The notes under the pieces were generated by a model, which saw nothing but the letters and a program-made list of their open reading frames with translations, was not told the DNA's origin and did no database searches. Made by a program: the position numbers and the translations under genes. From the IMG/VR virus record IMGVR_UViG_3300027759_000046, positions 1 to 64,000 of that record: 64,000 nt of DNA, one strand, 5' to 3'. Of the stretch, positions 35,152-62,730 are shown piece by piece; position 1 is the first letter of the stretch, and the number at the start of each line of letters is the position of its first letter.

Positions 35152-36111
35152 ATGGAACCTATCCTAGTAGAGAATCCCAATCGATTCGTTGTCTTCCCAA
35201 TCCAGCATCATGACTTGTGGGAATATTATAAAAAAGCGGAAGCTAGTTTTTGGACAGCTGAGGAAATTGACCTTGCTGCCGACCTAGTCGACTGGCGAAC
35301 TAAATTAAATGATGACGAGAGACACTTTATCAAGCATGTATTAGCATTCTTTGCAGCGAGTGATGGAATAGTTAACGAGAATTTAGCTGAGAATTTTGTT
35401 AAAGAAGTTCAATACCCAGAGGCTAAATTTTTCTATGGATTCCAAATTATGATGGAAAATATCCACTCTGAGACCTACTCATTGCTTATTGATACCTATA
35501 TTGCTGATCCGGAAGAGAAAATGAAATTGTTTAGAGCAATCGATACTATTCCAGCAGTTGCTAAAAAGGCAGAGTGGGCATTACGTTGGATCAAGAATTC
35601 AACTTTCCAAGAAAGACTTGTTGCGTTTGCAGCAGTCGAAGGAATCTTCTTCTCAGGATCGTTCTGTTCTATTTTTTGGTTGAAAAAACGGGGCCTTATG
35701 CCAGGATTAAGTTTCTCAAATGAACTTATTTCAAGAGACGAAGGCTCGCATACAGATTTTGCAGTTCACCTACACAATAATCATATCAACAATAAAGTTT
35801 CTCCAGAGAGAATCAAAGAGATCTTATTATCTGCTCTAGAAATTGAAAAAGAATTTATCATTGATGCATTACCAGTCAAAGTAATCGGTATGAATTCTGA
35901 CTTAATGTCTCAATACTTAGAGTTTGTAACAGATCGACTATTACAAGATTTAGGTTGTGAAAAGGTCTTCAATGTGCAAAATCCGTTTGATTTTATGGTA
36001 AACATCGCGTTAAATGGAAAAACTAATTTCTTCGAGAAGAGAGTTGGCGAATATCAGAAAGCGGGAGTAAAATCCGGAGATACAGGTTTTTCAATGGATG
36101 CAGATTTTTAA
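35152..36111 (+). CDS. nrdB: Ribonucleotide reductase class Ia beta subunit
   Basis: [50 protein letters not shown] and FFEKRVGEY. Confidence 0.97.
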
Positions 36112-36135
36112 CAATAAAAAACAAGGATTTAAGAA

Positions 36136-38544
36136 ATGAAAGTAATAAAAAGAGATGGCCACGCAGAAACTCTGCGCCTTGATAAAATAACTAACCGTAT
36201 CAAGAAACAAACTTACGGATTAGACACAGACCATGTAGATGCCCTTGAGGTTGCAACGAAAGTTGTATCAGGCCTATATGACGGAATTAGCACAGAAAAA
36301 CTTGATAGCCTTGCGGCCGAGACATCGGCTGCACTAGCCTACATTCACCCAGACTATTCAATCTTAGCTGCACGAATAGCAATCACCAGATTACATAAAA
36401 CAACTACTAAATCGTTTAGTGATACGATTGAACACCTTTACACCTACATCGATCCAAAGACTGGCCAGAATGCCGGCTTAATTTCAGACGAAACGTATGC
36501 AGCAGTTAAGAAGAATGCAAGTACTTTAAATGAGGCAATCATTCATGATAGAGATCTTAATTTCGACTATTTTGGTTTCAAGACCCTCGAGAGAAGTTAC
36601 CTATTAAAAACTAACGGTCAGCCTGCTGAATCCCCACAACATCTTTACATGAGAGTTGCGGTTGGAATTTGGGGCACAGACGTTCAAAATGTCCTAAAGA
36701 CATACGAACTCTTGTCAACTCATCAAATGACTCACGCAACACCTACTCTATTTAATGCAGGTACAAAACGTCCACAATTATCTTCATGCTTCTTATTAAC
36801 AATGCAAGAAGATTCAATCTCTGGAATTTACAAGACCTTAACTGACGTTGCTGCAATTTCGCAAAACGCTGGAGGAATAGGTTTAGCCATTTCAAATATC
36901 CGAGCAACAGGTTCTTACATTAAAGGAACTAACGGTACATCAAATGGTATTGTGCCAATGCTTAAAGTATTCAATGAAACAGCTAGATACGTTGATCAAG
37001 GCGGCGGAAAGCGTAAAGGTTCATTTGCAATCTATTTAGAGCCATGGCATGCCGATATTGAAGACTTCTTGGAATTAAGAAAGAATCACGGTAAAGAAGA
37101 ACGTCGTGCAAGAGATTTATTCTTGGCGTTATGGACACCAGATCTTTTCATGAAACGTGTTGAAGAAGATGCAGATTGGACTCTATTCTGTCCTGCTGAA
37201 ATCAATTGCGAACTTTGGGAAATGTACGGCGAAGAATTTGAAAAGAATTACATTCGTCTTGAACAAGAAGGAAAAGGACGCCACACAGTTAAGGCCAGAG
37301 TTCTTTGGCAAAAGGTGCTAGAGGCTCAAGTTGAAACCGGTACACCATACATCCTATTTAAAGATGCAGCAAACATCAAATCAAATCAAAAAAATCTAGG
37401 TACAATCAAGTCATCAAACTTATGTACTGAAATTATTGAATACACGTCAAAGGATGAGCAAGCTGTATGTAACTTAGCGTCAATTCCAGTAAATCAATTT
37501 ATCAATATTGGAAAACGTTCAGGTAAATTAAGAAAACCTCAATGCGATTATAATTTTACAGAATTGTATGAAGTTGCATATCAAACTACTCTAAACCTAA
37601 ATAAGGTAATTGATGTAAACTACTATCCAACTGTTGAAACTAAAAATTCAAATGTAAAGCATCGACCTATCGGGATCGGAATCCAAGGATTAGCCGATAC
37701 ATTTGCAATCATGGGTTACGAATTCAGTAATGATGAGGCTAAGAAATTAAATAGCGATATTTTTGAGACTATTTACTTCGCGGCAATGGAAGCATCAATT
37801 GACCTTGCTAAAAAAGAAGGATCATACGAGTCATATCAAGGTTCTCCATTAAGCCAAGGCCAATTTCAGTTTAATCTATGGGGAGTAAACGAATCTGAAC
37901 TATCTGGACTTTGGGATTGGACCGCTCTTCGCAAGAAATTAATGAAGTGGGGAGCTCGTAACTCTCTATTGCTTGCTCCGATGCCAACCGCTTCAACTGC
38001 TCAAATTATGGGTAATAATGAAGCCTTTGAACCATTCACTTCAAATATTGGAACTCGTAGAACTCTTGCTGGCGAATTTATAGTAGTTAACAAACATCTA
38101 GTTAAAGATCTAGTTGAATTGGATCTATGGAACGAATCTATGCGAAACCGAATTATCAGCGAAAAGGGCTCTGTCCAAAATATTCCAGAAATTCCAACTG
38201 AAATTAAAGCAATCTATAAAACCGTTTGGGAGATCAAGCAGAAAGATCTAATTGATATGGCAGCTGACCGTGGCAGATTCATCTGTCAATCACAGTCTCT
38301 AAATATCTTTATTAGAGATGTTAATACTGCAAAGCTTACATCAGCGCACTTCCATGCATGGAGAAAAGGCCTAAAAACCGGTATGTATTACTTACGAACA
38401 GAAGCTGCTTCTTCAGCAATTGCCTCGCTTGGATTAGATTTTAACGCAAAACCCGAAATAAAGCCTGTCGATATATTGGAAAACCTGGATGACATTACCT
38501 GTTCTCTAGATAACCCAGAGGATTGCATTGCATGTAGTTCATAA
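36136..38544 (+). CDS. nrdA: Ribonucleotide reductase class Ia alpha subunit with N-terminal ATP cone
   Basis: VIKRDG ATP cone, [40 protein letters not shown] and C-terminal CIAC. Confidence 0.97.
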
Positions 38545-42766: not shown

Positions 42767-43092
42767 TGAGCGAAAATAAAGAATTTACACCGTTATTCGA
42801 AAGAGTCCTAATTAAGCCGGACAGTGTCGAAACCAAAACAGAGACAGGCATCATCTTACCAGTTGAGTCCCGTAAACGTCCAAATACAGGCATTGTTATT
42901 TCGCTAGGTCACCTAGTTTCAGATAACTCAAAATGCCCAGTAAAAGAAGGCGACCGCGTTTTATACCAGAGATACTCTGGCTTAGATGTGAAAGTAAATG
43001 GCGAAGCGCATCATTTAGTTATGGCCAACGATTTAGTTGGAATTATAAATAATAATGCAAATAGCACAATTGAAATCGCAGACTATGCTTAA
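42766..43092 (+). CDS. groES: Co-chaperonin GroES
   Basis: PLFERVLIK, mobile loop KTETGIILP, VKEGDRVLY..YSG and DLVGII. Confidence 0.92.
   Translation: MSENKEFTPLFERVLIKPDSVETKTETGIILPVESRKRPNTGIVISLGHLVSDNSKCPVKEGDRVLYQRYSGLDVKVNGEAHHLVMANDLVGIINNNANSTIEIADYA
43045..43052 (+). promoter_or_regulatory. Late promoter motif (T)ATAAATAA embedded in the groES 3' end
   Basis: TATAAATAA about 33 nt upstream of the HAD-gene ATG at 43085. Confidence 0.55.
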
Positions 43093-43660
43093 GAAATTCT
43101 CACAATTCATTAATGAAAAACGCGGCGGAACTAAACAGATCTTCTGTGATCTAGACGGAGTTATCGTTGATTTCAATCGAGGTTTTAAAAACATTGAAGC
43201 AAACGACGATAAGCTGACTCCTGAAAAATACAATGACAAGCACGGTAAGCATTCCATGTGGAAAATTGTAGATCCGGAAGGCGAAAAGTTTTGGGCAAGA
43301 TTAAAGTGGATGAAAGATGGTAGAGAGTTATGGGATTACCTATCTCAATATGACCCAATCATTCTGTCTTCACCTAGTCGTAGCAAACACTCAATTCCAG
43401 GTAAAATGGAATGGATTAAGAGAAATCTTGGAATAAATCAAGCCAAACCAACTACATCAGCATCAGATTGGGATCCAGCTAGTCGAATCATCTTAAGTTC
43501 AGACAAATTCAAATTTGCAAGATCCAAAGACGATATCCTAATTGACGATACTCGTGCTAAGTTGGACAAATGGACAGCCGCTGGTGGAACAGGTATATTC
43601 CACAACGATGCAACTGATACAATTCGAGTTCTCGAGGAAATCTTTACGAAAAACGATTAA
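43085..43660 (+). CDS. HAD-superfamily 5'(3')-deoxyribonucleotidase-like protein
   Basis: IFCDLDGVIVDF (motif I), ILSSP, K..W and ILIDD (motif IV). Start moved from 43055 to ATG 43085 (MLKKFSQFINE), overlapping the groES stop. Confidence 0.85.
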   Translation: MLKKFSQFINEKRGGTKQIFCDLDGVIVDFNRGFKNIEANDDKLTPEKYNDKHGKHSMWKIVDPEGEKFWARLKWMKDGRELWDYLSQYDPIILSSPSRSKHSIPGKMEWIKRNLGINQAKPTTSASDWDPASRIILSSDKFKFARSKDDILIDDTRAKLDKWTAAGGTGIFHNDATDTIRVLEEIFTKND

Positions 43661-47201: not shown

Positions 47202-47669
47202 ATGGCAAATACTGACAATTCTTGCGCGAATTTAGAAATTGAAAACCTTTACTCAGCTAGCAAAGATACGCTAGGTGACATCATGACAATCCAGGCCGAG
47301 ACTCAAAAAAATGTTTACGGCTATAACTTCCAAGACATGACATTACGTGATTTAATGACCTTTTGGCACATGAATAATCATGCAATGATCGACGAGATCC
47401 ACGAGGCAACTGATGCTCTTGGCGGAATCAAAGACGGTGCAGGCAATGCAATCTGGAAGCGTTGGAAACAGGCTCACGAGAGCTTCTCTGACAAGAGATT
47501 CTCTGATCTATCTGAATCTGATCAACTTGAATGCAAATTTGAGATTGTGGACATACTGCACTTCTTTATGAATTATGCAATCTCAGTCGGAATGACTCCT
47601 CAGGAAATGTACAATATGTACATGTCAAAGAATGAAGAAAACCGAGCTCGTCAACAGAGAGGCTATTAA
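47202..47669 (+). CDS. gp56: dCTP/dUTP pyrophosphatase (T4 gp56-like, all-alpha NTP-PPase)
   Basis: NSCANL, IDEIHE, AIWKRWK, SDQLECKFEIVDILHFFMN and KNEENRARQQRGY parallel T4 gp56 (NECAHL, AVWKKWK, EDQLEIKFELVDIFHFVLN, KNKHNFERQDNGY). Confidence 0.85.
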   Translation: MANTDNSCANLEIENLYSASKDTLGDIMTIQAETQKNVYGYNFQDMTLRDLMTFWHMNNHAMIDEIHEATDALGGIKDGAGNAIWKRWKQAHESFSDKRFSDLSESDQLECKFEIVDILHFFMNYAISVGMTPQEMYNMYMSKNEENRARQQRGY

Positions 47670-53802: not shown

Positions 53803-53817
53803 AAAAACCTAAACGTT

Positions 53818-54471
53818 TTGGCAAAAAGAAAAAAAGAAGAACTGTTCGAAGATCTAGGATTTGAAGAACAAGATGATTTATCATACGAATCGGGGTTTGA
53901 CGATATTAGTGTAGTCGATGAGACTGATGGAGAAGATCCAGTTGAGCTTGAAAGACGTCGTACTGAATATGCTCGACTTAGAAAAAATGATAAGATTTTT
54001 AATAACTCATACAATATGGGTCAAAACTTATCAGAAGAAGACGAGGGCGAAGCCCGATCTCATTCGGAAATTAAATTAGATTCAAGCTCACCAGACTACC
54101 ATCTATACGATCGAGACCAATACTCAGATCACATTGACAACAAGATAACTCAATACGATATAGATCAATTCGTATCAGTATCTACTGACATCCAGGCGAT
54201 CCTAGGTGATCAACCTGATAAGCGTAAATTTACAAAGCCTGAGATAAATGAACTGTTCCAATTAATAACAGTTGGCGTAAGCAAAGGCGAAGATACAAGC
54301 GTATTCGTTAGTCCAATCCATATTCTTGATGCAATCTCGTCTTTGACCTGCATGGAATATAAGAAATTGTTTGACATGTTAACTTACGAACACAAGGAGA
54401 TTCTTCTATTGGAACTAAACAAGAAATACGGCTTTCTAGACAAGCCCTCCAAAAACCTTAAAATGTTTTAA
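53818..54471 (+). CDS. Acidic hypothetical protein (217 aa)
   Basis: TTG start; ORF fills the helicase-gp47 gap. Confidence 0.75.
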   Translation: MAKRKKEELFEDLGFEEQDDLSYESGFDDISVVDETDGEDPVELERRRTEYARLRKNDKIFNNSYNMGQNLSEEDEGEARSHSEIKLDSSSPDYHLYDRDQYSDHIDNKITQYDIDQFVSVSTDIQAILGDQPDKRKFTKPEINELFQLITVGVSKGEDTSVFVSPIHILDAISSLTCMEYKKLFDMLTYEHKEILLLELNKKYGFLDKPSKNLKMF

Positions 54472-54474
54472 TTA

Positions 54475-55590
54475 ATGAAACTATCAAATATTAGAAAAAT
54501 TAACCTAGTTGGAGATCTTCACCTAGGTATCAGAAATAACTCAGTTGAATGGTTAGAGATCCAAAAAGATTTTCTAACCGACTTTTTATTTAAGACGATT
54601 GACCAAGATTTTGATGAAGACCGAGATATTCTAATATTGGAAGGCGACATATTTCATTCAAGAGAATCAATTAACGTCAGAATCCAAAATGAAGCATTCG
54701 ATATCTTTAAGAAACTTTCAGCAAAGTTTAAAAGAGGAGTCTACATCATTATCGGAAACCACGACGTTTATTACAAAGACAAAAATGAAGTTCACTCGCT
54801 AAAGTCGTTAAACTACTTAGCTGAGAATATTCACGTATTCGAAACTCCAGAAATTCTAACAATTAATGGATCCCATAACTTCTTAATGTTACCTTGGATC
54901 GAAGACGTTTCGAGACTTTCAAATGTTGTAAACGATCACCGTAATATTTGCCAGTACATTGTATGTCATGCAGATATCAAAGGTCTAAAATTTAATAAGT
55001 GGACTCATGTTGAGCACGGTATTGAAATTGATGCACTTGATACCTATAAGAGAGTTTACGGCGGTCATATCCACCACAGACAAGAGAGCCGTAACGTTCT
55101 CTATACCGGAACTCCTTATCAAATGGATCGAGGTGACATGGGTAATGCCAAAGGATTCTATCAGCTAACGGTTGATACTCCTGAATTAAAAGAAGTGTTT
55201 GTTGAAAATACACAGTCTCCAACCTTTGTTAAGTTCGATATCATGAATGTTTTGGAATTAACGCATGCTGAAATTGAGGAAAGGTTCAGAAATAATTTTG
55301 TAGACTTAATGATCAATGTTAATTTTGCAAATAGGTTCTCAGTAACTCGTTTTCTTGAAGAGATCTCAGCAGTACCTCACCGTAAAATTGAATTTTTTAC
55401 TTACGTTGATCAGACTCAAGCTGATGCTGAAATGAATTCCGAATTTAATCCAGAAGAGGGCTTTAATATAACTGATATTTTTAAAATGTATGTAAAGTCA
55501 AGAGACTACTCACAAGACTTTAAATCTGACTTAGCTAGAAAATTCATTGAAATACATCAAGCCGTAAAAGAAGACAATACTTATGCCTAA
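54475..55590 (+). CDS. gp47: Recombination nuclease, Mre11/SbcD-like (T4 gp47)
   Basis: Metallophosphoesterase motifs GDLHLG, GDIFH, GNHD and GHIH, plus YTGTPYQ. Confidence 0.92.
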   Translation: MKLSNIRKINLVGDLHLGIRNNSVEWLEIQKDFLTDFLFKTIDQDFDEDRDILILEGDIFHSRESINVRIQNEAFDIFKKLSAKFKRGVYIIIGNHDVYYKDKNEVHSLKSLNYLAENIHVFETPEILTINGSHNFLMLPWIEDVSRLSNVVNDHRNICQYIVCHADIKGLKFNKWTHVEHGIEIDALDTYKRVYGGHIHHRQESRNVLYTGTPYQMDRGDMGNAKGFYQLTVDTPELKEVFVENTQSPTFVKFDIMNVLELTHAEIEERFRNNFVDLMINVNFANRFSVTRFLEEISAVPHRKIEFFTYVDQTQADAEMNSEFNPEEGFNITDIFKMYVKSRDYSQDFKSDLARKFIEIHQAVKEDNTYA

Positions 55591-56071
55591 TCCATCAATT
55601 AGTAAATACGTTCGAATTATTGAAATGAATCGGGAATTTAAAGCGATTGCTGCAATGGATGTTCCGGAAAACACAATAATTGAAATTTGCCCAGTTCTAA
55701 TTAGTAGCGCTAAAGCAATCATGTCATTAACTAATTCAGATTCTAAACTTGCAAGCAAAATCATAATTGACGAGGCTGCCATTGACAGGGAATATCAAGT
55801 GTTTGCTGAGCTTGGTGAAATGGAATTGGAAAGAAGGCTTGATTCAGGCCAAATTACACCAGCTGAGTATACTCAAATACTAAGATCTAAGGTCAACATA
55901 AACTCTCTACTAAATGCTAAAACTCACGGTCTGCCATTAGGAAACGGATTAATTTATGGAATAAGTGATTTTCCAAATATGGTCAGAGAATATCATTCAA
56001 GTAGTAAACTTTGCGTGTTTAGATCAGTACAATACATAATAGAAGGCAGTGAACTAACTTACTCCAAATAA
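55583..56071 (+). CDS. Degenerate SET-domain-like protein
   Basis: KAIAAMDVPENTIIEICPVL...LPLGNGLIYGISDFPN...VFRSVQYIIEGSELTY follows the bacterial SET pattern (VFA.RDI..GEIIE.CPV...LALGYGSLYNHS..PN...F.A.RDI..GEEIT.NY), but NHS is replaced by GIS. Confidence 0.55.
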   Translation: MPNPSISKYVRIIEMNREFKAIAAMDVPENTIIEICPVLISSAKAIMSLTNSDSKLASKIIIDEAAIDREYQVFAELGEMELERRLDSGQITPAEYTQILRSKVNINSLLNAKTHGLPLGNGLIYGISDFPNMVREYHSSSKLCVFRSVQYIIEGSELTYSK

Positions 56072-56077
56072 TATTAA

Positions 56078-57751
56078 ATGAAGATAACTCAATTCTCTTT
56101 TAAGAACATTTGTTCTTATGGCAATAAATTACAGACTTTTAAATTCTCAGAAGATCCTCAATTAGTATTGGTTCAGGGTAAGAATGGCAGCGGTAAATCT
56201 TCAATTTCCGATGCTCTAACTGTTGCACTATATGGCAAATCATCAATTCGTAAAACAAAAGAGATTCCAAATCGAATCAATAAAAATGCATACACGCATG
56301 TAGAGTTTTTAACCGGATCCGGCGATACGATTGAAATTGAAAGAGGCCTAGAGCCTAACTTTTCAAAATTATTAATCAATGGAACTGAGCATAATTTGCC
56401 AGATAAACGCCGAGTAGACGATTTTATCGAAGAAGAACTTACAAAGATCCCATTCAACGTATTCTCAAACACAATCAGTCTATCAGTTAATGATTTCAAG
56501 AGCTTTGTTAAGTTAAGCCCTCATGACAAGCGCCAAATTATTGATAAAATCTTTGGTTTAGATATTGTAAATGACATGTCTAAAATTGCCAAGGAAGAAG
56601 TTCGTGAATTAAAAGTATCAATACAAACAATTGACTCAACTGTTCTTAATAATGAAGCTCTGCTCCAAAATTCACAAGATCAGCTAACGAATCTTAAGCA
56701 AGATCTATCGTCGGCTAAAGATTCTAGGATTTTAGAGTTAACAACCGAAATTTCTGAGCTAAATAAAACTAAAGAGATTTATAAAGCCGAATACACAGGC
56801 TTTCAAGCCGAGTTAAAGAAATTAGAATCAGCAGTAACAGACGCTAGAGAAAAGAAGTCAAATATTCAATTAACTATTTCTGAAATTCAGAAAAAACTTG
56901 ACCTGTACTCCAAGAATAAGTGTCCACACTGTCTATCTGATCTTACTGACGCTGCACATTTAGGCATAAAGGATAAGCTAGTTGCTAAGAAACAGGAGCA
57001 AACTGACCTGATTCCAACTGCTAACTCTCAAATTACTGAAGCGAATCAATTACTTGAAGATCTAAAGGCTGCTCAAAGTTCTGCTCGAGATAAATTTTAT
57101 CAAGTGGATGGAGTTCTTGCTCCGCTAAAGAAAGAACTTTCTGAACTAAATGATACACCTGAGTCGACTGATAAGAAGTCTGGCACAACATACATAAATG
57201 GAGTAATTTCAAATATTGAATCTGAGATTTCAAAATTATCAGAAGAAAGAGCTAAATTAAGTTCACAATTATCAATTTCTCAAGAGATGGAAGACATTCT
57301 ATCAGATAATGGAATGAAGCGTGTTCTAATGAGTCAAATTATTCCAATGCTAAATAAGAAAATCTTGAAGACTTCAAAGCTTCTTGAATTTAAGTTTGCA
57401 TTTGAATTTGATTTAGAATTTAATCCAATAATTACTCACTTAGGAATGCAAATTTCTCCAGACTCGTTATCTGCTGGAGAACAAAAGAAGATGAACTTAA
57501 TCGTTCTATTGTGTATTTTGGAGCTCTTAAAATTAAAACATCACAAGGTTAATCTATTATTCCTAGATGAAGTATTCTCATCATTAGATGTTGAATCAAT
57601 CTATAGAGTAGTTGACCTATTGAAAACTTTTGCAAAAAAGTACAACATGACAGTATTCGTAATCTCTCATGATCCTTTACCTGAGGAGTTTTTCGACACA
57701 AAGTTAATGGTTGAAAACACCGACCACTTCTCAGACATCAAGTTCTTGTAA
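56078..57751 (+). CDS. gp46: Recombination ATPase, Rad50/SbcC-like (T4 gp46)
   Basis: GKNGSGKS, coiled coil with CPHC zinc hook, LSAGEQKK signature, LFLDE and ISH. Confidence 0.93.
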   Translation: MKITQFSFKNICSYGNKLQTFKFSEDPQLVLVQGKNGSGKSSISDALTVALYGKSSIRKTKEIPNRINKNAYTHVEFLTGSGDTIEIERGLEPNFSKLLINGTEHNLPDKRRVDDFIEEELTKIPFNVFSNTISLSVNDFKSFVKLSPHDKRQIIDKIFGLDIVNDMSKIAKEEVRELKVSIQTIDSTVLNNEALLQNSQDQLTNLKQDLSSAKDSRILELTTEISELNKTKEIYKAEYTGFQAELKKLESAVTDAREKKSNIQLTISEIQKKLDLYSKNKCPHCLSDLTDAAHLGIKDKLVAKKQEQTDLIPTANSQITEANQLLEDLKAAQSSARDKFYQVDGVLAPLKKELSELNDTPESTDKKSGTTYINGVISNIESEISKLSEERAKLSSQLSISQEMEDILSDNGMKRVLMSQIIPMLNKKILKTSKLLEFKFAFEFDLEFNPIITHLGMQISPDSLSAGEQKKMNLIVLLCILELLKLKHHKVNLLFLDEVFSSLDVESIYRVVDLLKTFAKKYNMTVFVISHDPLPEEFFDTKLMVENTDHFSDIKFL

Positions 57752-57776
57752 ACTATTCACGTTTTTTTAGTATATT
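57749..57776 (+). promoter_or_regulatory. Putative phage early/middle promoter TAAACT-N16-TATATT
   Basis: Motif spans the gp46 stop and the short intergenic region before the gp42-like gene. Confidence 0.55.
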
Positions 57777-57782
57777 TTATTT

Positions 57783-58664
57783 ATGATAGTATTTAAAGGC
57801 CAGACTTTTGCCGAGTGTTACCGTGACTCGCTAATCAATCTTTTCGAAGATGGTATTGAAAATAATGCCAGAGGCACCGTGAGCAAGGAGTTGCTTGACG
57901 TTGCGTTAGTTGTCGAAGATCCAACTCAATGCCTATATCAAAACGATAGGCGAGGTTCTCAAAAGAAGTATATTGCGGCTGAATTTTTGTGGTATTACTC
58001 AGGGCGTAATGACGTTAAGTTTATTGCGAATTGGGCTAAGTTTTGGGAATCAATCCAAAACGAAGACGGTTCAGCTAACTCAGCTTACGGCAACCTAATC
58101 TTTAAGGTTAGAAATCAGCACAATCTCTCCCAATACCAGTGGGCAATGCAAAGCTTAATCAGCGATCCTAACACGAGACAAGCTGTAATGCATTTCAATA
58201 TGCCGACTCACCAGTACAATGGAAACAAGGATTTTGTTTGTACAATGTACGCAAACTGCCATATCCGAAACAATAAGTTCTATATGTCAGTTTACATGAG
58301 AAGCAATGACGCTGTTTGGGGTACACCAACTGACGTAGCTTTCTTCTGTTCTTTACAGATGCAAATGTATTCTCAATTAAAAAACTTCTATCCAGAGTTA
58401 GAGCTTGGTTCGTATACTCACGTTGCAAATTCATACCACGTTTACGATAGACATTATGAATTAGGAACAGCAATGCTAGAGACAGCATTCAAACCAGAAG
58501 CACTTCCACACGTTGTCGCAGATCTAGTCGATATCGATGGAGAGCCTAGCCGTAATTTATTAATCTTAATGGATGCGTTATTTGCAAACGATGAGCCGTA
58601 TCTAATTTTTCAAGATGGTCCAGATATGTTAAAATGGATTCATACAAATGTTTCAAAGAAATAA
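57783..58664 (+). CDS. gp42: Thymidylate-synthase-superfamily enzyme, most like dCMP hydroxymethylase (T4 gp42)
   Basis: NSAYG, DPNTRQA, DFVCT (catalytic Cys), MRSNDAVWGTPTD and SYHVYDRH align with T4 gp42 (NSNYG, NPDSRRG, DFMCT, MRSNDVVFGFRND, SLHVYSRH). Asp sits where dUMP-specific ThyA has Asn. Confidence 0.75.
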   Translation: MIVFKGQTFAECYRDSLINLFEDGIENNARGTVSKELLDVALVVEDPTQCLYQNDRRGSQKKYIAAEFLWYYSGRNDVKFIANWAKFWESIQNEDGSANSAYGNLIFKVRNQHNLSQYQWAMQSLISDPNTRQAVMHFNMPTHQYNGNKDFVCTMYANCHIRNNKFYMSVYMRSNDAVWGTPTDVAFFCSLQMQMYSQLKNFYPELELGSYTHVANSYHVYDRHYELGTAMLETAFKPEALPHVVADLVDIDGEPSRNLLILMDALFANDEPYLIFQDGPDMLKWIHTNVSKK

Positions 58665-58666
58665 TC

Positions 58667-59122
58667 ATGACGCCAAAGCAACATAAAATAGACCTCGCTT
58701 ACATTAAGATGGCCCAAGTCTGGGCAGATCTATCTCATGCCACTCGTAAAAAAGTTGGAGCTCTAATTGTTAAAAATAACACAATCATCTCTGATGGGTT
58801 CAACGGAACTCCGTCTGGTTTTGAAAATGAATGTGAAGAAGCTATCCATAATGAAGACGGTTCATTTAAAGAATATAAAACCAAATGGTATGTTTTACAT
58901 GCCGAATCAAATGCATTAGCTAAAGTTGCCAAATCAACACAAAGTAGCGATGGCGCAACCCTCTATATTACATATTCCCCATGCACAGATTGTAGTAAAT
59001 TAATTCTACAGGCTGGTATTAAACGCGTTGTTTACTTGGAAGAGTATCGTGATACAAACGGCTTGGACTTTTTACGAAGAGCCGGTGTTGAGGTTAAAAA
59101 AATCAACATACAAAATGATTGA
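58667..59122 (+). CDS. cd: dCMP deaminase
   Basis: KVGALIVK, GFNGTPSG, HAESNAL and SPCTDC zinc motifs. Start moved from 58634 to ATG 58667, just after the upstream stop. Confidence 0.93.
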   Translation: MTPKQHKIDLAYIKMAQVWADLSHATRKKVGALIVKNNTIISDGFNGTPSGFENECEEAIHNEDGSFKEYKTKWYVLHAESNALAKVAKSTQSSDGATLYITYSPCTDCSKLILQAGIKRVVYLEEYRDTNGLDFLRRAGVEVKKINIQND

Positions 59123-59516
59123 TACTACAAATCGCGTACTTGAAATAGTCTTCGTTAAAGATCTAAAACAATTCGTTCAAGTCCTGCACAAAAAATGCAA
59201 ATCCGACTATCTTTTAAATGTCAATAAGATAATTAGGGAGAAATTTGAACAAGATATTCTTGTACCAAATAAAATTCAATCTTTCTTAATTAATTACGAA
59301 ATCAAGAAATTAATTGATAAAGCAGTCAATGTTAGAAACCGCAAATACAGTCGAATAATCTACGTTAACTCAAGTCTGTCAAAGAATACTGTGTTAAACA
59401 CAATCGACTTTCTATCGAATGCTTATGAAGAGGTTAAATTTGAACCTCTAATAATTGATTTAGAAGAGGACTTTTGCACAGAGCTAAAGATTAAAACAAT
59501 AAAAAAGGGACGATAA
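59115..59516 (+). CDS. Hypothetical protein (about 133 aa)
   Basis: ATG 59115 overlaps the deaminase stop; the longer 59028 start is unlikely. Confidence 0.7.
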   Translation: MIDTTNRVLEIVFVKDLKQFVQVLHKKCKSDYLLNVNKIIREKFEQDILVPNKIQSFLINYEIKKLIDKAVNVRNRKYSRIIYVNSSLSKNTVLNTIDFLSNAYEEVKFEPLIIDLEEDFCTELKIKTIKKGR

Positions 59517-59526
59517 ACGTCCCTTT
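59501..59526. terminator. Terminator hairpin between convergent genes
   Basis: AAAGGGACG-ATAAA-CGTCCCTTT, with an A tract on the left giving a U tract on the minus strand. Confidence 0.75.
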
Positions 59527-59551
59527 CTAGTATTCAATAAGTTTTAAAAGA

Positions 59552-60157
59552 TTAAGCTCCTTCTTCAGTATTCTCTTCTTCACCTTCTTCGCCTTCTTCC
59601 TCTTCTTTGCACATTTTTTCAATTGCTGCACATAATAGGTCGCAAACTTCTTCTTTTTCGATTTCCATTTTCTCGCAAATGTCATCAATTAAATCTTGAA
59701 GATCGTCTCCGAATTCTTCCATTAATTTTTCCAATTGCTCCTCGTCTACTTCGTATCCAAGGTCTACATTTTCATCATCTTCTAAAGGTTCTTCAGCTTC
59801 GTTAAATTCATAGTTTTCATTTACGAATTCTTGGTATCTTGCGATCTTTCCTTCTTCAACTGCATCAGTTGTTGCGATAGTTGGTTTAGCGTACATTTGT
59901 GTATAAGGTTTTTTCTTTGCTGTTTTATAAACGATATCGCTGGAAAATCCTTTCCAAGCAGAATCATAATTTGGGTTGAATCGGCCTCCTTCAGCATTAG
60001 GATCGCGCTCAACAACTCTTTGATATCCATCTAGAGATTTTCTCTTTGATTTATCGAAATCTTCTTTTTCAGAAGGACCACCGAACGCAGGTTTCTTTGG
60101 GTTTGTCCATCTTTCTAGAGAAGGATTATCTCTGCGTTTTACGTTAAACATGTCCAT
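59552..60157 (-). CDS. Hypothetical protein with basic N-terminal half and very acidic C-terminal half; candidate head-core protein
   Basis: Contains KIARYQEFVNE followed by E/D-rich helices. Confidence 0.78.
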   Translation of the reverse strand: MDMFNVKRRDNPSLERWTNPKKPAFGGPSEKEDFDKSKRKSLDGYQRVVERDPNAEGGRFNPNYDSAWKGFSSDIVYKTAKKKPYTQMYAKPTIATTDAVEEGKIARYQEFVNENYEFNEAEEPLEDDENVDLGYEVDEEQLEKLMEEFGDDLQDLIDDICEKMEIEKEEVCDLLCAAIEKMCKEEEEGEEGEEENTEEGA

Positions 60158-60174
60158 GTCTTACTTTAGTATTT

Positions 60175-60777
60175 TTATTGACCAATACGAGTTTCAACGT
60201 AACGATCCGCTACGAATCCAATTGTAAGATCGGCAATTTTATCGTCTGCATAACTTAAGGTTTGCTCTGTAAATTTCTCAGTATCTATGAAAACTGGAGA
60301 GAAAACAAACTCTCTAAAGATTACACCAGAACGGTTGAATTGAGTTACTTGAATTACTGCTGGACTAGCAACAGTACCTGCGTAATCTTTTTTCAATCCT
60401 TGCGCACCAGTCATTGGATCATAGATCAAATTAGACCAAGCGCGGAATGCGTTATAAATGTAATTATCGTTATCGTCATTTAAGTTCAATTCAAATGCAA
60501 TCTTGAATTTAGCTAACGTTGTTGTAGGTTTAGCAGCAGCGTAAGCTCTTTCAGAGAATTTGAATCTCTGTGTTTGCAAAGCACCACCGGCGTTACCGTG
60601 AAGTTCTGGAAGTCCAGTAACCGTCTTAACGTGTTCTAGAGTTAGATTATTGTTAAATCCAATTTTTGCAGAGACAGCAGGTGGAGGCGTAATAATTACT
60701 TCAAACTGATTTAAGTAAATCGGTTCATATCTTCCTGGACCTGCGGTTGAGTTTTTAAAATGTGGTAGACCAGCCAT
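60175..60777 (-). CDS. gp19: Tail tube protein (T4 gp19-like)
   Basis: EPIYLNQFEV, FRAWSNLIYDPMTG..GLKKDYAG, VTQFNRSG..REF and LSY..LTIGFVADRY. Late motif at 60797-60804. Confidence 0.85.
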   Translation of the reverse strand: MAGLPHFKNSTAGPGRYEPIYLNQFEVIITPPPAVSAKIGFNNNLTLEHVKTVTGLPELHGNAGGALQTQRFKFSERAYAAAKPTTTLAKFKIAFELNLNDDNDNYIYNAFRAWSNLIYDPMTGAQGLKKDYAGTVASPAVIQVTQFNRSGVIFREFVFSPVFIDTEKFTEQTLSYADDKIADLTIGFVADRYVETRIGQ

Positions 60778-60796
60778 CTTGTCTTATTTTTTTAAT

Positions 60797-60804
60797 TTAT
60801 TTAT
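60797..60804 (-). promoter_or_regulatory. Late promoter motif ATAAATAA
   Basis: Exact motif about 20 nt upstream of the tail-tube ATG. Confidence 0.65.
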
Positions 60805-60820
60805 TCGAGAGTTTCGCAGT

Positions 60821-61726
60821 TTATCGCGGACCGACCGGAGTTGGGTCAGCTTTTTTGTTAACCTCATTCTTAATTTCGGTGAATTCGCGCTCCTTTGCGC
60901 CGGAACCCTTTAAGCTTTTAAGTGCTTTAAACACCCAGTCTTCGTCTTCTGCATCCTTTCCTTTTGGAACAACTGAATTTTCGCCAACGGTAAATGATAA
61001 TTCAATCGAAGGCAATACTTCAGCTAAGAGATTCTTTTGAACTCCACCGCCTTCGCCTTCAACTGTAAAATCTGAATAACTGAATTCAATTGTGTCTCCC
61101 ATAATACCGCCAAATTTAACTATTGCTTTAATTTTGCTAGAGTTGTCAAGATTTTCATCTCCGACCATCTTAGTTATATTATTGGTTGCACGATACTGAA
61201 TAGTTACTCCGCTTCCGCCTTTTTCCTGAACATCAATGAATCTCATTCTATCAGCAATCACATGAACAGAATAACTTCCATTAAATGCAGGAGTCTTCTC
61301 TGGATCCTTAGGCTCATCTTTCTTTGGCTCGTCATTAGTTATCTCATCTTCAGGTTCTAGTGAATCCTGATCATCCTGAGTTTTATCTATGACAGCTGGC
61401 AGTCCAGGCTTTTGGAAAACTGCTGGTAAATTCTTATCATTACCGGCAGGCAATGCTAGAGTTTCGTTTGTCTTCTTTGTTAGCTTAGAATCAATTACTG
61501 CATTAATCTCTTTAAGTAGATTAATTAACTTATCGGCGCTTGTGTACTTGTAATAAGTTGCAAGAGCAGAAGCCTTTGTAAACAATAAGTCCGGATAAAT
61601 GTCAGTAGTATGCAGTTCAATATCTTGAGCATTCTGATCCCAATGAGGCTGTCCGCCGTTTCCGGGATTGGTCCACTTAATATTAAAGCTTATGTATGAC
61701 TCTGCAATTACGCCGTTTCCTATCAT
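60821..61726 (-). CDS. Hypothetical protein (301 aa)
   Basis: ORF in the late operon between the capsid and tube genes. Confidence 0.78.
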   Translation of the reverse strand: MIGNGVIAESYISFNIKWTNPGNGGQPHWDQNAQDIELHTTDIYPDLLFTKASALATYYKYTSADKLINLLKEINAVIDSKLTKKTNETLALPAGNDKNLPAVFQKPGLPAVIDKTQDDQDSLEPEDEITNDEPKKDEPKDPEKTPAFNGSYSVHVIADRMRFIDVQEKGGSGVTIQYRATNNITKMVGDENLDNSSKIKAIVKFGGIMGDTIEFSYSDFTVEGEGGGVQKNLLAEVLPSIELSFTVGENSVVPKGKDAEDEDWVFKALKSLKGSGAKEREFTEIKNEVNKKADPTPVGPR

Positions 61727-61729
61727 TTA

Positions 61730-62233
61730 TTAGCCGATTTCTTTATCTCCGCGGAATTCTTTTCCACGATTTGCTTTTTTCTTATCTGGATCAACTGTTT
61801 TATAGTTAGCCCAAATTTCGTTGTAAATACGGCAAGATGCTCCCATGAAATTAACGATACCTACATATTTCTTGCGATCATCACCTTTCATTTTTGAAAT
61901 CTTCTTACCGATTGAACGAGCATCATCTAAATCAAGTTCTTCCTCGTCAGATTTTCCAACCAAGTCCTTAAGCGAATTTGCTTCGTACATATACGATTCA
62001 AACGTTGGATGCACGTGTGGTCCTCGTGGGCCCATTGGATCCAGGTCAATATCTTCTGATTCAATATCAGCAGATCCACCCATTCTTTTTATTTGAGCAA
62101 GGCCTTCTTCCTGAGAGTTTACTGGAATCAAAGTGTTTTGACCAACTACATAGTAGCCGTCTTCGCGCTCTTCAATTCTCAATGGTCCAGACAGATCGAA
62201 TTCCATGCCATCACTAAATTTAAGTTTTGACAT
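61730..62233 (-). CDS. Hypothetical protein (167 aa)
   Basis: ORF in the late operon; internal PTFESYMYEA motif. Confidence 0.75.
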   Translation of the reverse strand: MSKLKFSDGMEFDLSGPLRIEEREDGYYVVGQNTLIPVNSQEEGLAQIKRMGGSADIESEDIDLDPMGPRGPHVHPTFESYMYEANSLKDLVGKSDEEELDLDDARSIGKKISKMKGDDRKKYVGIVNFMGASCRIYNEIWANYKTVDPDKKKANRGKEFRGDKEIG

Positions 62234-62244
62234 AGTTAACTGAT

Positions 62245-62604
62245 TTATTTAGGCATCTTTGCCATAGCTGGATCAACTTTCTTGTTGATAGCTTTACCTT
62301 TGATAACAAGCTTAGAGATCTTAGGATCAACTTCTTTCTTAGAAGCAGTTCCACGACCCTTAGGCATATCGGCCATTTCAGGTTTCACCATTTTATTAGA
62401 AGCAGAACCACGACCCTTAGGCATATCAGCCATTTCAGGTTTTACAGTTTTACTGATTGCTCTACCTTTTCCAACAGGAAGTGCAGACATCTCATCATCA
62501 ACTTGTTTTGTAATTCTTTTGCCTTTAGCTGGAGCGCCTTTAGCAAGATCTTGATTCGTTTTCTTTTCAAAAAGATACTCTTCGTAGCTTAAAACTGATT
62601 TCAT
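62245..62604 (-). CDS. Small basic repeat protein; candidate capsid-internal DNA-binding protein
   Basis: N-terminus MKSVLSYEEYLFE, then Lys-rich repeats of about 19 aa (VKPEMADMPKGRG twice, with degenerate flanks). Confidence 0.78.
   Translation of the reverse strand: MKSVLSYEEYLFEKKTNQDLAKGAPAKGKRITKQVDDEMSALPVGKGRAISKTVKPEMADMPKGRGSASNKMVKPEMADMPKGRGTASKKEVDPKISKLVIKGKAINKKVDPAMAKMPK
62341..62443. repeat. 57-bp-period coding tandem repeat
   Basis: AGAAGCAG..CCACGACCCTTAGGCATATC.GCCATTTCAGGTTT starting at 62341 and 62398. Confidence 0.85.
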
Positions 62605-62651
62605 GTGAATTTTGTTTTTTTGTAATTTCTTTTTTGCTAATCCTAGCTAGG

Positions 62652-62659
62652 TTATTTAT
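62652..62659 (-). promoter_or_regulatory. Late promoter motif ATAAATAA
   Basis: Just downstream of the capsid terminator and upstream of the ATG at 62604. Confidence 0.65.
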
Positions 62660-62674
62660 TAGTGAAAGTCGGCT

Positions 62675-62708
62675 AAAAAAGAAAAGGCTCCCTTTTGAGG
62701 AGCCTTTT
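62675..62708 (-). terminator. Rho-independent terminator after the major capsid gene
   Basis: Stem AAAAGGCTCC/GGAGCCTTTT; on the minus strand it is followed by TCTTTTTT. Confidence 0.8.
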
Positions 62709-62730
62709 ACTATGAATAATCTAGTTAAGA

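What the first reader, a model, noticed from the sequence alone, without database searches (positions are those of the whole stretch)
57749..59122. Probable cytosine-modified genome: gp42-like dCMP hydroxymethylase plus dCMP deaminase, with a gp56-like dCTPase elsewhere in the window
Seen: this TS-family enzyme reads RSNDAVWGTPTD, with Asp at the position of E. coli ThyA Asn177 (RSCDVFLGLPFN) and T4 gp42 Asp179 (RSNDVVFGFRND), and has DFVCT rather than PPCH. Established: Asn versus Asp at this site sets dUMP versus dCMP specificity, and gp42 + gp56 + cd form the T4 hmC pathway. No glucosyltransferase or other hypermodifying gene is visible here. Inference: a non-enterobacterial jumbo phage that replaces C with 5hmC, 5mC or an unknown derivative, evading restriction and CRISPR. 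Automated annotation would probably mislabel the gene thyA.
Basis: partly seen in the sequence, partly recalled or inferred. Interest (0 to 1): 0.8.

Follow-up and report, generated by a model that had tools for sequence, protein, structure and literature searches.

The report
Phage dCMP hydroxymethylase pathway (hmC DNA)
An uncultured 253-kb freshwater phage carries, beside a normal thymidylate synthase elsewhere in its genome, a second thymidylate-synthase-like enzyme whose active-site residues match the T4 enzyme that makes 5-hydroxymethyl-dCMP, plus a dCTPase and a dCMP deaminase, so its DNA very probably contains 5-hydroxymethylcytosine instead of cytosine, a known phage trick found here in a new lineage.

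Summary
ORF 57783-58664 is a divergent thymidylate-synthase (TS) homolog. ORF 58634-59122 is a dCMP deaminase. ORF 47202-47669 is a full-length T4 gp56 (dCTPase) homolog.

At every published diagnostic position the TS homolog matches T4 gp42:
- Asp at E. coli ThyA position 177 (dCMP, not dUMP)
- Asp three residues before the catalytic Cys (hydroxymethyl, not methyl)
- Asp169 kept (not a flavin-dependent 5-hydroxy-dCMP synthase)
- Ser167 and Arg126 (deoxyribo, not ribo)

The window is bases 1-64000 of a 253,137-bp IMG/VR contig, of which I read 88%. It also encodes a canonical ThyA at 206,229-207,371 and a guanylate-kinase-family NMP kinase, so the focal gene is not the phage's dTMP synthase.

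The order gp47-orf-gp46-TS homolog-deaminase is conserved in all 25 related contigs. Of the 142 nearest cluster representatives, 134 share the signature.

The enzyme is not close kin of gp42. It lies in a separate clade that has a MilA-like C-terminal extension.

No chemical evidence exists. There is no T4-type glucosyltransferase, but many glycosyltransferase and NDP-sugar genes lie outside the window. CATATG, one of the few sites still cut in fully modified T4 DNA, is absent from the genome.

Verdict: new member of a known kind, of moderate interest.

The parts
57783..58664 (+). TS-superfamily enzyme predicted to be a dCMP hydroxymethylase (5hm-dCMP synthase). Key residues in its own numbering: Glu67, Ser100-x-Tyr102, Arg132, Asp150, Cys153, Thr154, Ser174, Asp176, Asp184, His219, Tyr221.
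   Evidence: PF00303 71 bits. Best PDB sequence hits are MilA 1e-18 and T4 gp42 1.3e-17, with true TS at 1e-11 or worse. Signature D-C-T-D-D equals gp42. AF2 pLDDT 96.7; Foldseek top hit MilA at TM 0.78, T4 dCH at TMt 0.77.
58634..59122 (+). dCMP deaminase (zinc motifs HAE and PCxxC present). It overlaps or directly abuts the TS homolog. The probable true start is 58667.
   Evidence: PF00383 79 bits, phrog_174 3e-52. PDB 4p9c 1.4e-40 and T4 cd 1vq2 1.5e-23. Adjacency conserved in all related loci that extend downstream of the TS homolog (23 of 25).
47202..47669 (+). gp56-like all-alpha NTP pyrophosphohydrolase, predicted dCTPase/dUTPase
   Evidence: 33% identity to T4 gp56 over the whole length, E = 7e-26. 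phrog_173 2.8e-18. Weak dimeric-dUTPase matches.
59115..59516 (+). Conserved 133-aa ORF of unknown function directly downstream of the deaminase (start overlaps its stop by 8 nt)
   Evidence: JGI gene call. Found after the deaminase in most relatives at 36-100% identity. No Pfam, PHROG or Atlas lead.
54475..57751 (+). gp47-like Mre11 nuclease (54475-55590), a 162-aa ORF (55583-56071) and gp46-like Rad50 ATPase (56078-57751). They lie upstream in the same close-packed gene string.
   Evidence: Pfam Metallophos, SMC_N and SbcC_Walker_B. Order conserved in the 25 relatives. 31-nt spacer before the TS homolog.
35152..38544 (+). Class Ia ribonucleotide reductase small (35152-36111) and large (36136-38544) subunits; supply of dNDPs
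   Evidence: phrog_86 1.8e-63 and phrog_84 1e-204
43055..43660 (+). 5'(3')-deoxyribonucleotidase-like protein. Possible pool-editing enzyme; its role in this pathway is not established.
   Evidence: phrog_2643 4.7e-24; no Pfam hit

Best explanation
The focal gene encodes a folate-dependent dCMP hydroxymethylase that works like T4 gp42.

Proposed mechanism:
1. Cys153 attacks C6 of dCMP. Asp184 reads the N3/N4 face of cytosine.
2. Methylene-tetrahydrofolate donates one carbon.
3. Asp150 (three residues before the Cys), together with Ser100/Tyr102, activates water to hydrate the exocyclic methylene. The product is 5-hydroxymethyl-dCMP.

Proposed T4-style nucleotide pathway around it:
- The gp56 homolog hydrolyses dCTP (and dUTP) to the monophosphate. 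This keeps canonical C out of DNA and feeds the hydroxymethylase.
- The adjacent dCMP deaminase diverts part of the dCMP to dUMP.
- The phage's own canonical ThyA (contig 206,229-207,371) turns that dUMP into dTMP.
- A phage guanylate-kinase-family NMP kinase (217,346-217,825), or a host kinase, raises 5hm-dCMP to the diphosphate. A nucleoside diphosphate kinase, presumably the host's, then makes the triphosphate.
- The split family-B polymerase incorporates it.

The virion DNA would therefore carry 5hmC in place of C, possibly decorated further after replication.

What is shown: the homologies, the residue signature, the presence of both TS types, and the conserved synteny.
What is inferred: catalysis, kinase specificity, full replacement of C, and any later decoration.
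For: - Diagnostic residues relative to E. coli ThyA are 143 D, 146 C, 147 T, 169 D, 177 D. These are identical to T4 gp42. They differ from ThyA (L,C,H,D,N), RB69 gp48 (E,C,T,N,D), SPO1 gp29 (D,C,N,D,N) and the Xp12 homolog (N,C,P,D,D).
- The rules come from the literature. N177D gives dCMP specificity and L143D/E gives a hydroxymethyl product; D169N marks 5-hydroxy-dCMP synthases (PMC13326640). T4 D145N is inactive, and Asp at Cys-3 plus Ser-x-Tyr was proposed as the hydroxymethylation signature (PMC6400193). Ser/Arg versus Ala/Lys sets deoxy versus ribo specificity (PMC5175136).
- A second, canonical ThyA is present: 50% identical to E. coli ThyA, PF00303 306 bits, signature L,C,H,D,N.
- The gp56 homolog scores E = 7e-26. 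The deaminase is confirmed.
- The gene order is conserved in 25 of 25 related loci. Asp150 is invariant and Asp184 is at least 90% conserved across 79 homologs down to about 28% identity. 134 of 142 nearest cluster representatives share the signature.
- In metagenomes, Asp177 TS homologs are enriched on cytosine-modified contigs. They co-occur there with dCMP deaminase and a MazG-type pyrophosphohydrolase (PMC8670742).
- Indirect evidence: C/G-containing 4-mer palindromes are not avoided overall (mean O/E 1.0) and GATC, GGCC, CCGG and CCWGG sites are numerous, but CATATG is absent, 0 against about 29 expected. NdeI (CATATG) is one of the few enzymes that still cut fully modified T4 DNA (PMC7653180).
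Against: - There is no chemical or read-level evidence. Only assembled contigs were available, so no modification signal could be examined.
- No homolog of T4 gp1 dNMP kinase, Alc, DenA, DHFR or the alpha/beta-glucosyltransferases was found in the 88% of the genome read. The only candidate kinase looks like an ordinary guanylate kinase.
- The enzyme is only 28% identical to gp42 and falls in a different clade that also contains dUMP-specific enzymes. Function therefore rests on a handful of residues.
- The residue rules for methyl versus hydroxymethyl products rest on few characterised enzymes.
- 11.7% of the contig was not read.
Confidence: 0.72

Rival explanations
1. The enzyme is a dCMP methyltransferase, so the phage DNA carries 5-methylcytosine as in Xanthomonas phage Xp12.
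For: Asp at position 177 is shared with the Xp12 TS homolog. Xp12 has the same TS homolog followed by dCMP deaminase, and it also has Ser-x-Tyr. The N177D mutant of ordinary TS makes 5-methyl-dCMP (PMC8670742).
Against: The residue three before the catalytic Cys is Asp, and it is invariant in 79 homologs. That matches the hydroxymethylases T4 gp42, SPO1 gp29 and MilA. The Xp12 homolog has Asn there and ThyA has Leu. T4 D145N loses activity. The best sequence and fold matches are hydroxymethylases.
Confidence: 0.07
2. The enzyme is a flavin-dependent 5-hydroxy-dCMP synthase like RB69 gp48 or DLP3 gp80. The resulting 5-hydroxycytosine would then be glycosylated by the phage's many glycosyltransferases.
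For: Such enzymes are TS homologs with Asp177 and an acidic residue at 143. They sit in phages that encode NDP-sugar synthesis and glycosyltransferases, and this genome is rich in both.
Against: The diagnostic D169N change is absent. The window has RSND where RB69 gp48 has RSQN, and Asp176 is invariant in the family. In the tree RB69 gp48 lies outside the window's clade.
Confidence: 0.05
3. 5hm-dCMP is an intermediate. The translationally coupled deaminase converts it to 5hm-dUMP, so the modified base in the DNA is 5-hydroxymethyluracil or a derivative of it.
For: The two genes are tightly and universally adjacent. From memory, T-even dCMP deaminase also accepts 5hm-dCMP.
Against: The phage keeps a canonical ThyA. 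No dTTPase or dTMPase homolog was recognised. The same TS homolog plus deaminase adjacency occurs in Xp12, whose DNA has 5mC and normal T. In T4 the deaminase simply feeds the TS.
Confidence: 0.05
4. It is an ordinary, merely divergent thymidylate synthase and the DNA is unmodified.
For: Pfam and all automatic annotations call it thymidylate synthase.
Against: Its scores of 26-62 bits lie far below every ThyA equivalog cut-off, which range from 108 to 405 bits. It has Asp instead of Asn177, Asp instead of Leu143 and Thr instead of His147. The same genome has a bona fide ThyA scoring 306 bits.
Confidence: 0.02

Closest known systems
T4 gp42 deoxycytidylate hydroxymethylase (PDB 1B5D/1B5E/6A9A) and the T4 hmC pathway (gp56, cd, td, gp1, alpha/beta-gt)
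   Same: The residues are identical at all five diagnostic active-site positions, and the Ser-x-Tyr, Glu, Arg, His and Tyr substrate residues are also shared. The genome has full-length homologs of gp56 and cd, and a td-like ThyA. The gene sits next to gp46/gp47 in a T4-like replication module.
   Different: Identity is only 28%. The enzyme is about 50 residues longer, with a C-terminal helical extension, and it lies in a different clade. There is no homolog of gp1, alpha-gt, beta-gt, Alc or DenA. The deaminase is adjacent to the hydroxymethylase, which is not the case in T4.
MilA, CMP 5-hydroxymethylase of mildiomycin biosynthesis (PDB 5JNH, 5B6D)
   Same: It is the best sequence match (1e-18) and the best fold match (TM 0.78 over about 305 columns, C-terminal extension included). 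It shares Asp at the 143 and 177 positions.
   Different: MilA's ribose-selecting Ala176 and Lys133 are Ser174 and Arg132 here, as in the deoxy-specific enzymes. The context is a phage replication module, not an antibiotic gene cluster.
SPO1 gp29 dUMP hydroxymethylase
   Same: It is placed, on a long and uncertain branch, in the same broad clade. It has Asp at position 143 and a long C-terminal extension.
   Different: gp29 has Asn at 177 (dUMP), whereas the window enzyme has Asp (dCMP).
Asp177 TS homologs of cytosine-modified metagenomic phage contigs (MetaGPA study, eLife 2021)
   Same: It shares the defining residue and the same co-occurring partners, namely dCMP deaminase and a MazG-type pyrophosphohydrolase.
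   Different: No carbamoyltransferase was seen in the 88% of this genome that was read. Instead the genome carries many glycosyltransferase, FkbM methyltransferase and NDP-sugar genes.
Xp12 TS homolog (presumed dCMP methylase) with adjacent dCMP deaminase
   Same: Both have Asp177. Both show the order TS homolog then deaminase on one strand.
   Different: Xp12 has Asn and Pro at positions 143 and 147, against Asp and Thr here. Xp12 DNA carries 5mC.

Membership tests
Thymidylate synthase superfamily (PF00303) | Significant match to the family profile, and the TS fold | tested here: met
   PF00303 71.2 bits against a cut-off of 24.3. AF2 model with pLDDT 96.7 matches TS-fold structures at probability 1.0.
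Canonical ThyA (dUMP to dTMP) | Reaches the NCBIfam ThyA equivalog cut-offs | tested here: not met
   Best score is 61.8 bits against a cut-off of 327; all six models are far below threshold.
Canonical ThyA (dUMP to dTMP) | Asn177, Leu143 and His147 (E. coli numbering) | tested here: not met
   The window enzyme has Asp, Asp and Thr. The phage's other TS gene, at 206,229-207,371, has Asn, Leu and His.
dCMP hydroxymethylase (T4 gp42 type, 5hm-dCMP synthase) | Asp at the ThyA-177 position (gp42 Asp179), which selects cytosine | tested here: met
   Asp184 aligns with gp42 Asp179 in HMMER and MAFFT alignments. It is at least 90% conserved in 79 homologs.
dCMP hydroxymethylase (T4 gp42 type, 5hm-dCMP synthase) | Catalytic Cys, with an acidic residue three positions upstream (gp42 Asp145) | tested here: met
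   The motif KDFVCT gives Asp150 and Cys153. Asp150 is invariant.
dCMP hydroxymethylase (T4 gp42 type, 5hm-dCMP synthase) | Ser-x-Tyr water-holding pair (gp42 Ser94/Tyr96) | tested here: met
   NSAYG aligns with gp42 NSNYG. The Xp12 homolog has the pair too, so it is not discriminating on its own.
dCMP hydroxymethylase (T4 gp42 type, 5hm-dCMP synthase) | Deoxyribose-selecting Ser167 and Arg126 equivalents | tested here: met
   Ser174 (in RSND) and Arg132 (in NTRQ) are present, against Ala176 and Lys133 in MilA.
dCMP hydroxymethylase (T4 gp42 type, 5hm-dCMP synthase) | Common descent with T4 gp42, forming one clade | tested here: not met
   In a quick ML tree, gp42 falls outside the 57-row clade (SH-aLRT 97) that holds the window enzyme. 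The branches are long, so the placement is tentative.
dCMP hydroxymethylase (T4 gp42 type, 5hm-dCMP synthase) | Makes 5hm-dCMP from dCMP and CH2-THF | not testable with these tools
   This needs an enzyme assay or in vivo LC-MS.
5-hydroxy-dCMP synthase (RB69 gp48 / DLP3 gp80) | Asn replacing Asp169 | tested here: not met
   The window has Asp176 and RB69 gp48 has Asn.
CMP hydroxymethylase (MilA/BcmA) | Ala and Lys at the MilA 176 and 133 positions | tested here: not met
   The window has Ser and Arg there.
T4-type hmC nucleotide pathway (system) | dCTPase (gp56), dCMP deaminase (cd) and a separate dTMP synthase (td) | tested here: met
T4-type hmC nucleotide pathway (system) | A dNMP kinase that accepts 5hm-dCMP (gp1) | tested here: inconclusive
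   There is no gp1 homolog. A 159-aa guanylate-kinase-family protein lies at 217,346-217,825, but its specificity is unknown.
T4-type hmC nucleotide pathway (system) | hmC glucosyltransferases (alpha-gt, beta-gt) | tested here: not met
   phmmer finds no hit better than E = 0.02. Unrelated GT2, GT4 and GT-D-like genes are present.

The most novel reading that the evidence does not exclude
The 5hmC is only the handle. This lineage may use its unusually large sugar toolkit to build a new methylated and/or N-acetylated amino-sugar or heptose-type hypermodification on cytosine. That would be a glyco-hmC chemistry not yet described.

The toolkit includes:
- at least four GT2/GT4 glycosyltransferases and two GT-D-like proteins
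- three or four FkbM methyltransferases
- a PfkB kinase with a cytidylyltransferase-like protein
- an NTP-transferase fused to a HAD phosphatase
- an epimerase/dehydratase
- a DegT aminotransferase and two hexapeptide acyltransferases

The total loss of CATATG would then mark the rare restriction specificity that this modification fails to block.
Probability: 0.2. Interest if true: 0.7.

Novelty: new member of a known kind. Interest (0 to 1): 0.4.

Why it matters
If correct, this is a widespread lineage: more than 700 close homologs on freshwater, riverine and other metagenome contigs of up to 295 kb. These roughly 250-kb T4-like phages, probably infecting Bacteroidota-like hosts, would replace cytosine with 5hmC.

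Consequences:
- Restriction and CRISPR outcomes, and sequencing and assembly behaviour, would differ for these phages.
- Automatic annotation as 'thymidylate synthase' hides the trait.
- The enzyme clade is distinct from T4 gp42. It mixes Asp (dCMP) and Asn (dUMP) members, which makes it useful for studying how pyrimidine specificity switches.

The concept itself is already established: an Asp177 TS homolog with a dCTPase and a deaminase marks modified C. The gain is therefore in extent and taxonomy rather than in principle.

Tried and rejected
- Megablast of 50000-64000 against 50,697 phage genomes found no match. The best protein relative there is only 44% identical (LR756500.1).
- Sequencing runs: only assembled contigs were served, so no base-level modification signal could be read. 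A metatranscriptome holds identical pieces of the genes, but that does not prove transcription.
- No homologs were found by phmmer for T4 gp1, Alc, DenA, Frd, alpha-gt or beta-gt.
- The ThyX motif screen gave one hit, at 193,468-194,025, which Pfam shows is a CAP-domain protein.
- A thymidine-kinase-like P-loop in a 97-aa ORF (197,099-197,392) has no Pfam match.
- The AAA_33 P-loop protein beside Rnl1 looks like a polynucleotide kinase, not a dNMP kinase.
- The Atlas search gave nothing for the 133-aa downstream ORF. For the 596-aa glycosyltransferase it returned only 'generic GT4'.
I rebuilt the alignment without that row.
- The first metagenome scan, with a 105-aa query, found nothing.
- One family search failed on a coordinate slip and was resent.
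Contig bases 86,443-93,630 and 230,741-253,137 were not read. The first gap was seen only in relatives.
Full report
**What is there**

The stretch holds two close-packed genes on the + strand:
- a 293-aa thymidylate-synthase (TS) superfamily protein at 57783-58664
- a 162-aa zinc deaminase at 58634-59122

An internal ATG at 58667, two bases after the TS stop, fits the 149-151 aa deaminases of relatives better than the called start.

The TS protein matches Pfam PF00303 at 71 bits. It misses every NCBIfam ThyA equivalog cut-off by a wide margin. PHROGs and JGI call the family 'thymidylate synthase'.

The deaminase is a dCMP deaminase:
- PF00383 at 79 bits
- best solved relative is deoxycytidylate deaminase 4p9c (from cyanophage S-TIM5, from memory), at 1.4e-40
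- T4 cd scores 1.5e-23, and the HAE and PCxxC zinc motifs are aligned

The 'gp56-like' gene is 47202-47669. It is 33% identical to T4 gp56 from end to end, E = 7e-26.

**Where the window comes from**

The window is bases 1-64000, in the same coordinates, of IMG/VR contig IMGVR_UViG_3300027759_000046. This is the same as JGI Ga0209296_1000013, 253,137 bp, from a freshwater metagenome.

Near-identical contigs occur in several lake and river samples from 2017 to 2022. A relative of almost the same length (252,618 bp) starts at a different point of the same gene order. That suggests complete, circularly permuted genomes.

The core genes are T4-like: gp23, gp20, gp13, gp46/47, UvsX, gp41-type helicase, gp32, gp55, tail sheath and topoisomerase II. 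The major capsid protein is nearest to uncultured huge phages, to the Lak phages and to Tenacibaculum phages, at 28-38% identity. So 'non-enterobacterial jumbo phage' is right. The host is unknown.

**What the TS homolog is**

The closest solved proteins by sequence are the two cytosine hydroxymethylases, MilA (1e-18) and T4 gp42 (1.3e-17). Genuine thymidylate synthases start at 1e-11.

I aligned it with reference sequences fetched from annotated records: E. coli ThyA, T4 gp42, RB69 gp48, SPO1 gp29 and the Xp12 homolog. I then read the positions that the literature uses as diagnostics.

| ThyA position | Window residue | What the position indicates | Comparison | Source |
|---|---|---|---|---|
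| 177 | Asp184 | Asn selects dUMP, Asp selects dCMP | gp42 Asp179; SPO1 gp29 (dUMP enzyme) has Asn | |
| 169 | Asp176 | Every tested flavin-dependent 5-hydroxy-dCMP synthase has Asn | RB69 gp48 has Asn | |
| 167 and 126 | Ser174 and Arg132 | Ser/Arg in deoxy enzymes; Ala/Lys in ribo-specific MilA and BcmA | As in the deoxy enzymes | |

Cys153, Glu67, Tyr102, His219 and Tyr221 are also in place.

The five-position signature D-C-T-D-D is the same as that of T4 gp42. It differs from every other characterised class.

An AlphaFold2 model built from 79 homologs is confident, with pLDDT 96.7 and pTM 0.94. Its best fold match is MilA, at TM 0.78 with the C-terminal helical extension included. T4 dCH matches at TMt 0.77, and ordinary TSs score much the same.

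**Is it the phage's only TS?**

No. I walked along the contig with gene look-ups and locus scans. I read 1-86,442 and 93,631-230,740, which is 88.3% of the contig, with zero mismatches between overlapping pieces.

A second TS-family gene lies at 206,229-207,371 on the minus strand:
- 380 aa, 50% identical to E. coli ThyA
- PF00303 at 306 bits
- Leu143, Cys146, His147, Asp169 and Asn177, plus two insertions

So this phage, like T4 with td and gene 42, has one real dTMP synthase and one Asp-type homolog.

Nearby, at 217,346-217,825, is a 159-aa guanylate-kinase-family NMP kinase, beside an ATP-dependent DNA ligase. It is the only candidate for phosphorylating 5hm-dCMP.

There is no homolog of T4 gp1. 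I also found no ThyX, DHFR, Alc or DenA, and no T4 alpha- or beta-glucosyltransferase.

**Conservation**

- The protein has more than 700 close homologs (55-89% identical) on metagenome contigs of up to 295 kb.
- A library-wide HMMER search returned 6086 relatives. Of the 142 nearest 50%-cluster representatives of full length, 134 carry D-C-T-D-D and four carry D-C-T-D-N.
- In an alignment of 79 homologs down to about 28% identity, Asp150 and Asp176 are invariant and Asp184 is at least 90% conserved.
- All 25 related IMG/VR loci (62-100% identity) keep the order gp47, 162-aa ORF, gp46, TS homolog, deaminase, wherever the locus reaches that far. Most also keep the 133-aa ORF that follows. None has a second TS within 10 kb.
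- The same TS homolog followed by dCMP deaminase is found in Xp12, whose DNA carries 5mC. The two Pfam families also co-occur on cytosine-modified metagenomic contigs.

**Phylogeny**

In a quick maximum-likelihood tree the window enzyme sits inside a 57-row clade (SH-aLRT 97). The rows are almost all D-C-T-D-D. The clade also takes in SPO1 gp29 and a few Asn-type rows.

T4 gp42, RB69 gp48, E. coli ThyA and the phage's own ThyA lie on the other side. Branches are long and the root is arbitrary, so I claim only this: the enzyme is gp42-like in its active site but is not a close relative of gp42. Within its own clade, cytosine and uracil specificity appear to have switched more than once.

**Mechanism proposed**

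Each step below is marked as shown or inferred.
1. The gp56 homolog converts dCTP and dUTP to monophosphates. Homology is shown; activity is inferred.
2. The focal enzyme converts dCMP to 5hm-dCMP. The residue signature is shown; catalysis is inferred.
3. The deaminase sends part of the dCMP to dUMP, and the phage ThyA makes dTMP. Homology is shown.
4. The Gmk-family kinase or a host kinase makes the diphosphate, and a nucleoside diphosphate kinase (presumably the host's) the triphosphate. This is inferred and is the weakest link.
5. The phage polymerase incorporates the modified nucleotide, so virion DNA has 5hmC in place of C. This is inferred.

**Indirect support from the DNA itself**

Across the 223.5 kb read, C/G-containing 4-mer palindromes are not avoided overall: their mean observed/expected ratio is 1.0. 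Sites with internal cytosines are numerous: GATC 1084, GGCC 420, CCGG 372, CCWGG 249.

CATATG, however, is completely absent. A maximal-order Markov model expects 28.8 occurrences. In the window alone there are 0, against 16 ± 4.7 in shuffles.

The site is also missing from 84 kb of the 87%-identity relative and from several other relatives. Relatives at about 70% identity have it at normal frequency. Two others lack GATATC and TTTAAA as well.

NdeI (CATATG) is one of the very few type II enzymes that cut fully glucosyl-hmC T4 DNA to completion. T4 resists 94% of the enzymes tested and T4gt resists 82%.

This pattern is what a cytosine-modified genome facing an NdeI-like enzyme would show. It is suggestive, not proof.

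**Further modification**

No hypermodifying gene is visible inside the window. Just beyond it the genome is rich in sugar genes.

| Contig position | Genes |
|---|---|
| 67,444-72,163 | GT4-family protein (596 aa), GT2, FkbM methyltransferase, GT-D-like protein |
| 101,358-104,527 | NTP-transferase/HAD fusion, second FkbM methyltransferase, epimerase/dehydratase |
| 108,537-111,018 | PfkB kinase, cytidylyltransferase-like protein, cupin |
| about 119.7, 123.8 and 158.7-160.7 kb | further GT-D-like, GT2 and TOD1-like genes |
| 141,596-144,064 | DegT aminotransferase, short-chain dehydrogenase, two hexapeptide acyltransferases |

Glycosyltransferases of both folds are known to decorate 5hmC in phage DNA and often accompany TS homologs. 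Phage genes of this kind could equally serve virion or host glycans. None of these genes adjoins the TS homolog, and none resembles the T4 enzymes. I treat glycosylated hmC as an open, more novel possibility at about 0.2.

**Comparison and novelty**

Functionally this is the T4 gene 42/56/cd/td scheme. By family it is a TS-superfamily pyrimidine hydroxymethylase of a clade other than gp42's.

The idea that Asp177 TS homologs with a deaminase and a MazG-type pyrophosphohydrolase mark cytosine-modified phage DNA in metagenomes is already published. The residue rules are published too.

A paper on boreal freshwater jumbo phages that I checked does not mention thymidylate synthase or DNA modification.

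The finding is therefore a new member of a known kind, in an abundant and uncultured jumbo-phage lineage. It has good bioinformatic support and no chemistry.

**Limits**

- No enzyme or nucleoside data exist.
- 11.7% of the contig was not read.
- Kinase specificity is unknown.
- The methyl-versus-hydroxymethyl rule rests on few enzymes.
- The tree has long branches.

Noticed in passing
whole window; contig 1-86,442 and 93,631-230,740: The palindrome CATATG (NdeI site) is entirely absent. There are 0 copies in the window against 16 ± 4.7 in shuffles, and 0 in 223.5 kb against 28.8 expected. It is also absent from close relatives, but present at normal frequency in relatives at about 70% identity. 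Two other relatives (L026, L027) also lack GATATC and TTTAAA.
   Followed up: partly
window 26797-27540 and 48046-49437; contig 94,354-95,811 (L044 724-2181): The family-B DNA polymerase appears to be split into three separately encoded pieces tens of kb apart: a 3'-5' exonuclease, an N-terminal exo/pol part and a C-terminal PF00136 part.
   Followed up: no
contig 67,444-72,163; 101,358-104,527; 108,537-111,018; about 119.7 kb; 123,793-124,506; 141,596-146,189; 158,688-160,694 (L003, L044, L046-L051): The genome carries an unusually large glycan toolkit. It includes GT4, three GT2, two GT-D-like and a TOD1-like glycosyltransferase, and three or four FkbM methyltransferases. It also includes a PfkB kinase with a cytidylyltransferase, an NTP-transferase/HAD fusion, an epimerase/dehydratase, a DegT aminotransferase, an SDR and two hexapeptide acyltransferases. 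The target (DNA, virion or host glycan) is unknown.
   Followed up: partly
window 27555-29135 and 42766-43092; contig 66,478-67,356, 111,018-112,994 and 133,021-133,692: The phage encodes its own chaperone and protease set: GroEL, GroES, a DnaJ-domain protein, a ClpB-like double AAA+ protein and ClpP.
   Followed up: no
L049 5961-8360 (contig about 135.3-137.7 kb): An array of 17 tRNA genes, including three tRNA-Met, lies in a 2.9-kb stretch with no called protein genes.
   Followed up: partly
contig 127,693-132,835 (L048) and about 86-89 kb (seen in relatives L039/L040): There is a set of RNA-repair genes: a T4 Rnl1-like ligase, an Rnl2-like ligase, a 137-aa AAA_33 kinase (weakly PseT-like), a HAD phosphatase and a 982-aa protein with an RNA-ligase domain.
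   Followed up: no
contig 139,518-140,171 (L049 3522-4175); 198,164-199,192; 215,245-216,234: Pfam finds a Tad6 family protein (I recall this as an anti-defence family; not checked), a histone-deacetylase-domain protein and a UvdE UV endonuclease.
   Followed up: no
window 8600-14716 (-), 14732-18367 (-), 21814-25398 (-), 29236-33717 (+): Very large ORFs (2038, 1211, 1194 and 1493 aa) have no Pfam match, and the one tested against PHROGs (the 1493-aa ORF) has none either. The first three sit in a presumed tail or baseplate block. The fourth sits inside the replication block.
   Followed up: no
window 38635-39183 (+): A 182-aa ORF has a proline/alanine-rich low-complexity N-terminal third and no family match. 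It lies directly after the ribonucleotide reductase genes.
   Followed up: no
window 57998-58597, 58682-58856 and 59017-59279: A lake metatranscriptome run (X3) holds 100%-identical contigs over the TS homolog and the deaminase, with higher depth over the structural gene at 59.6-60.5 kb. This is compatible with active infection in situ. DNA carry-over is not excluded.
   Followed up: partly
L179 44377-46195 (Xanthomonas phage Xp12, MT664984): The 5mC phage Xp12 encodes an Asp177 TS homolog, a dCMP deaminase and a DHFR as three consecutive genes. The TS homolog is annotated simply as 'thymidylate synthase'.
   Followed up: partly
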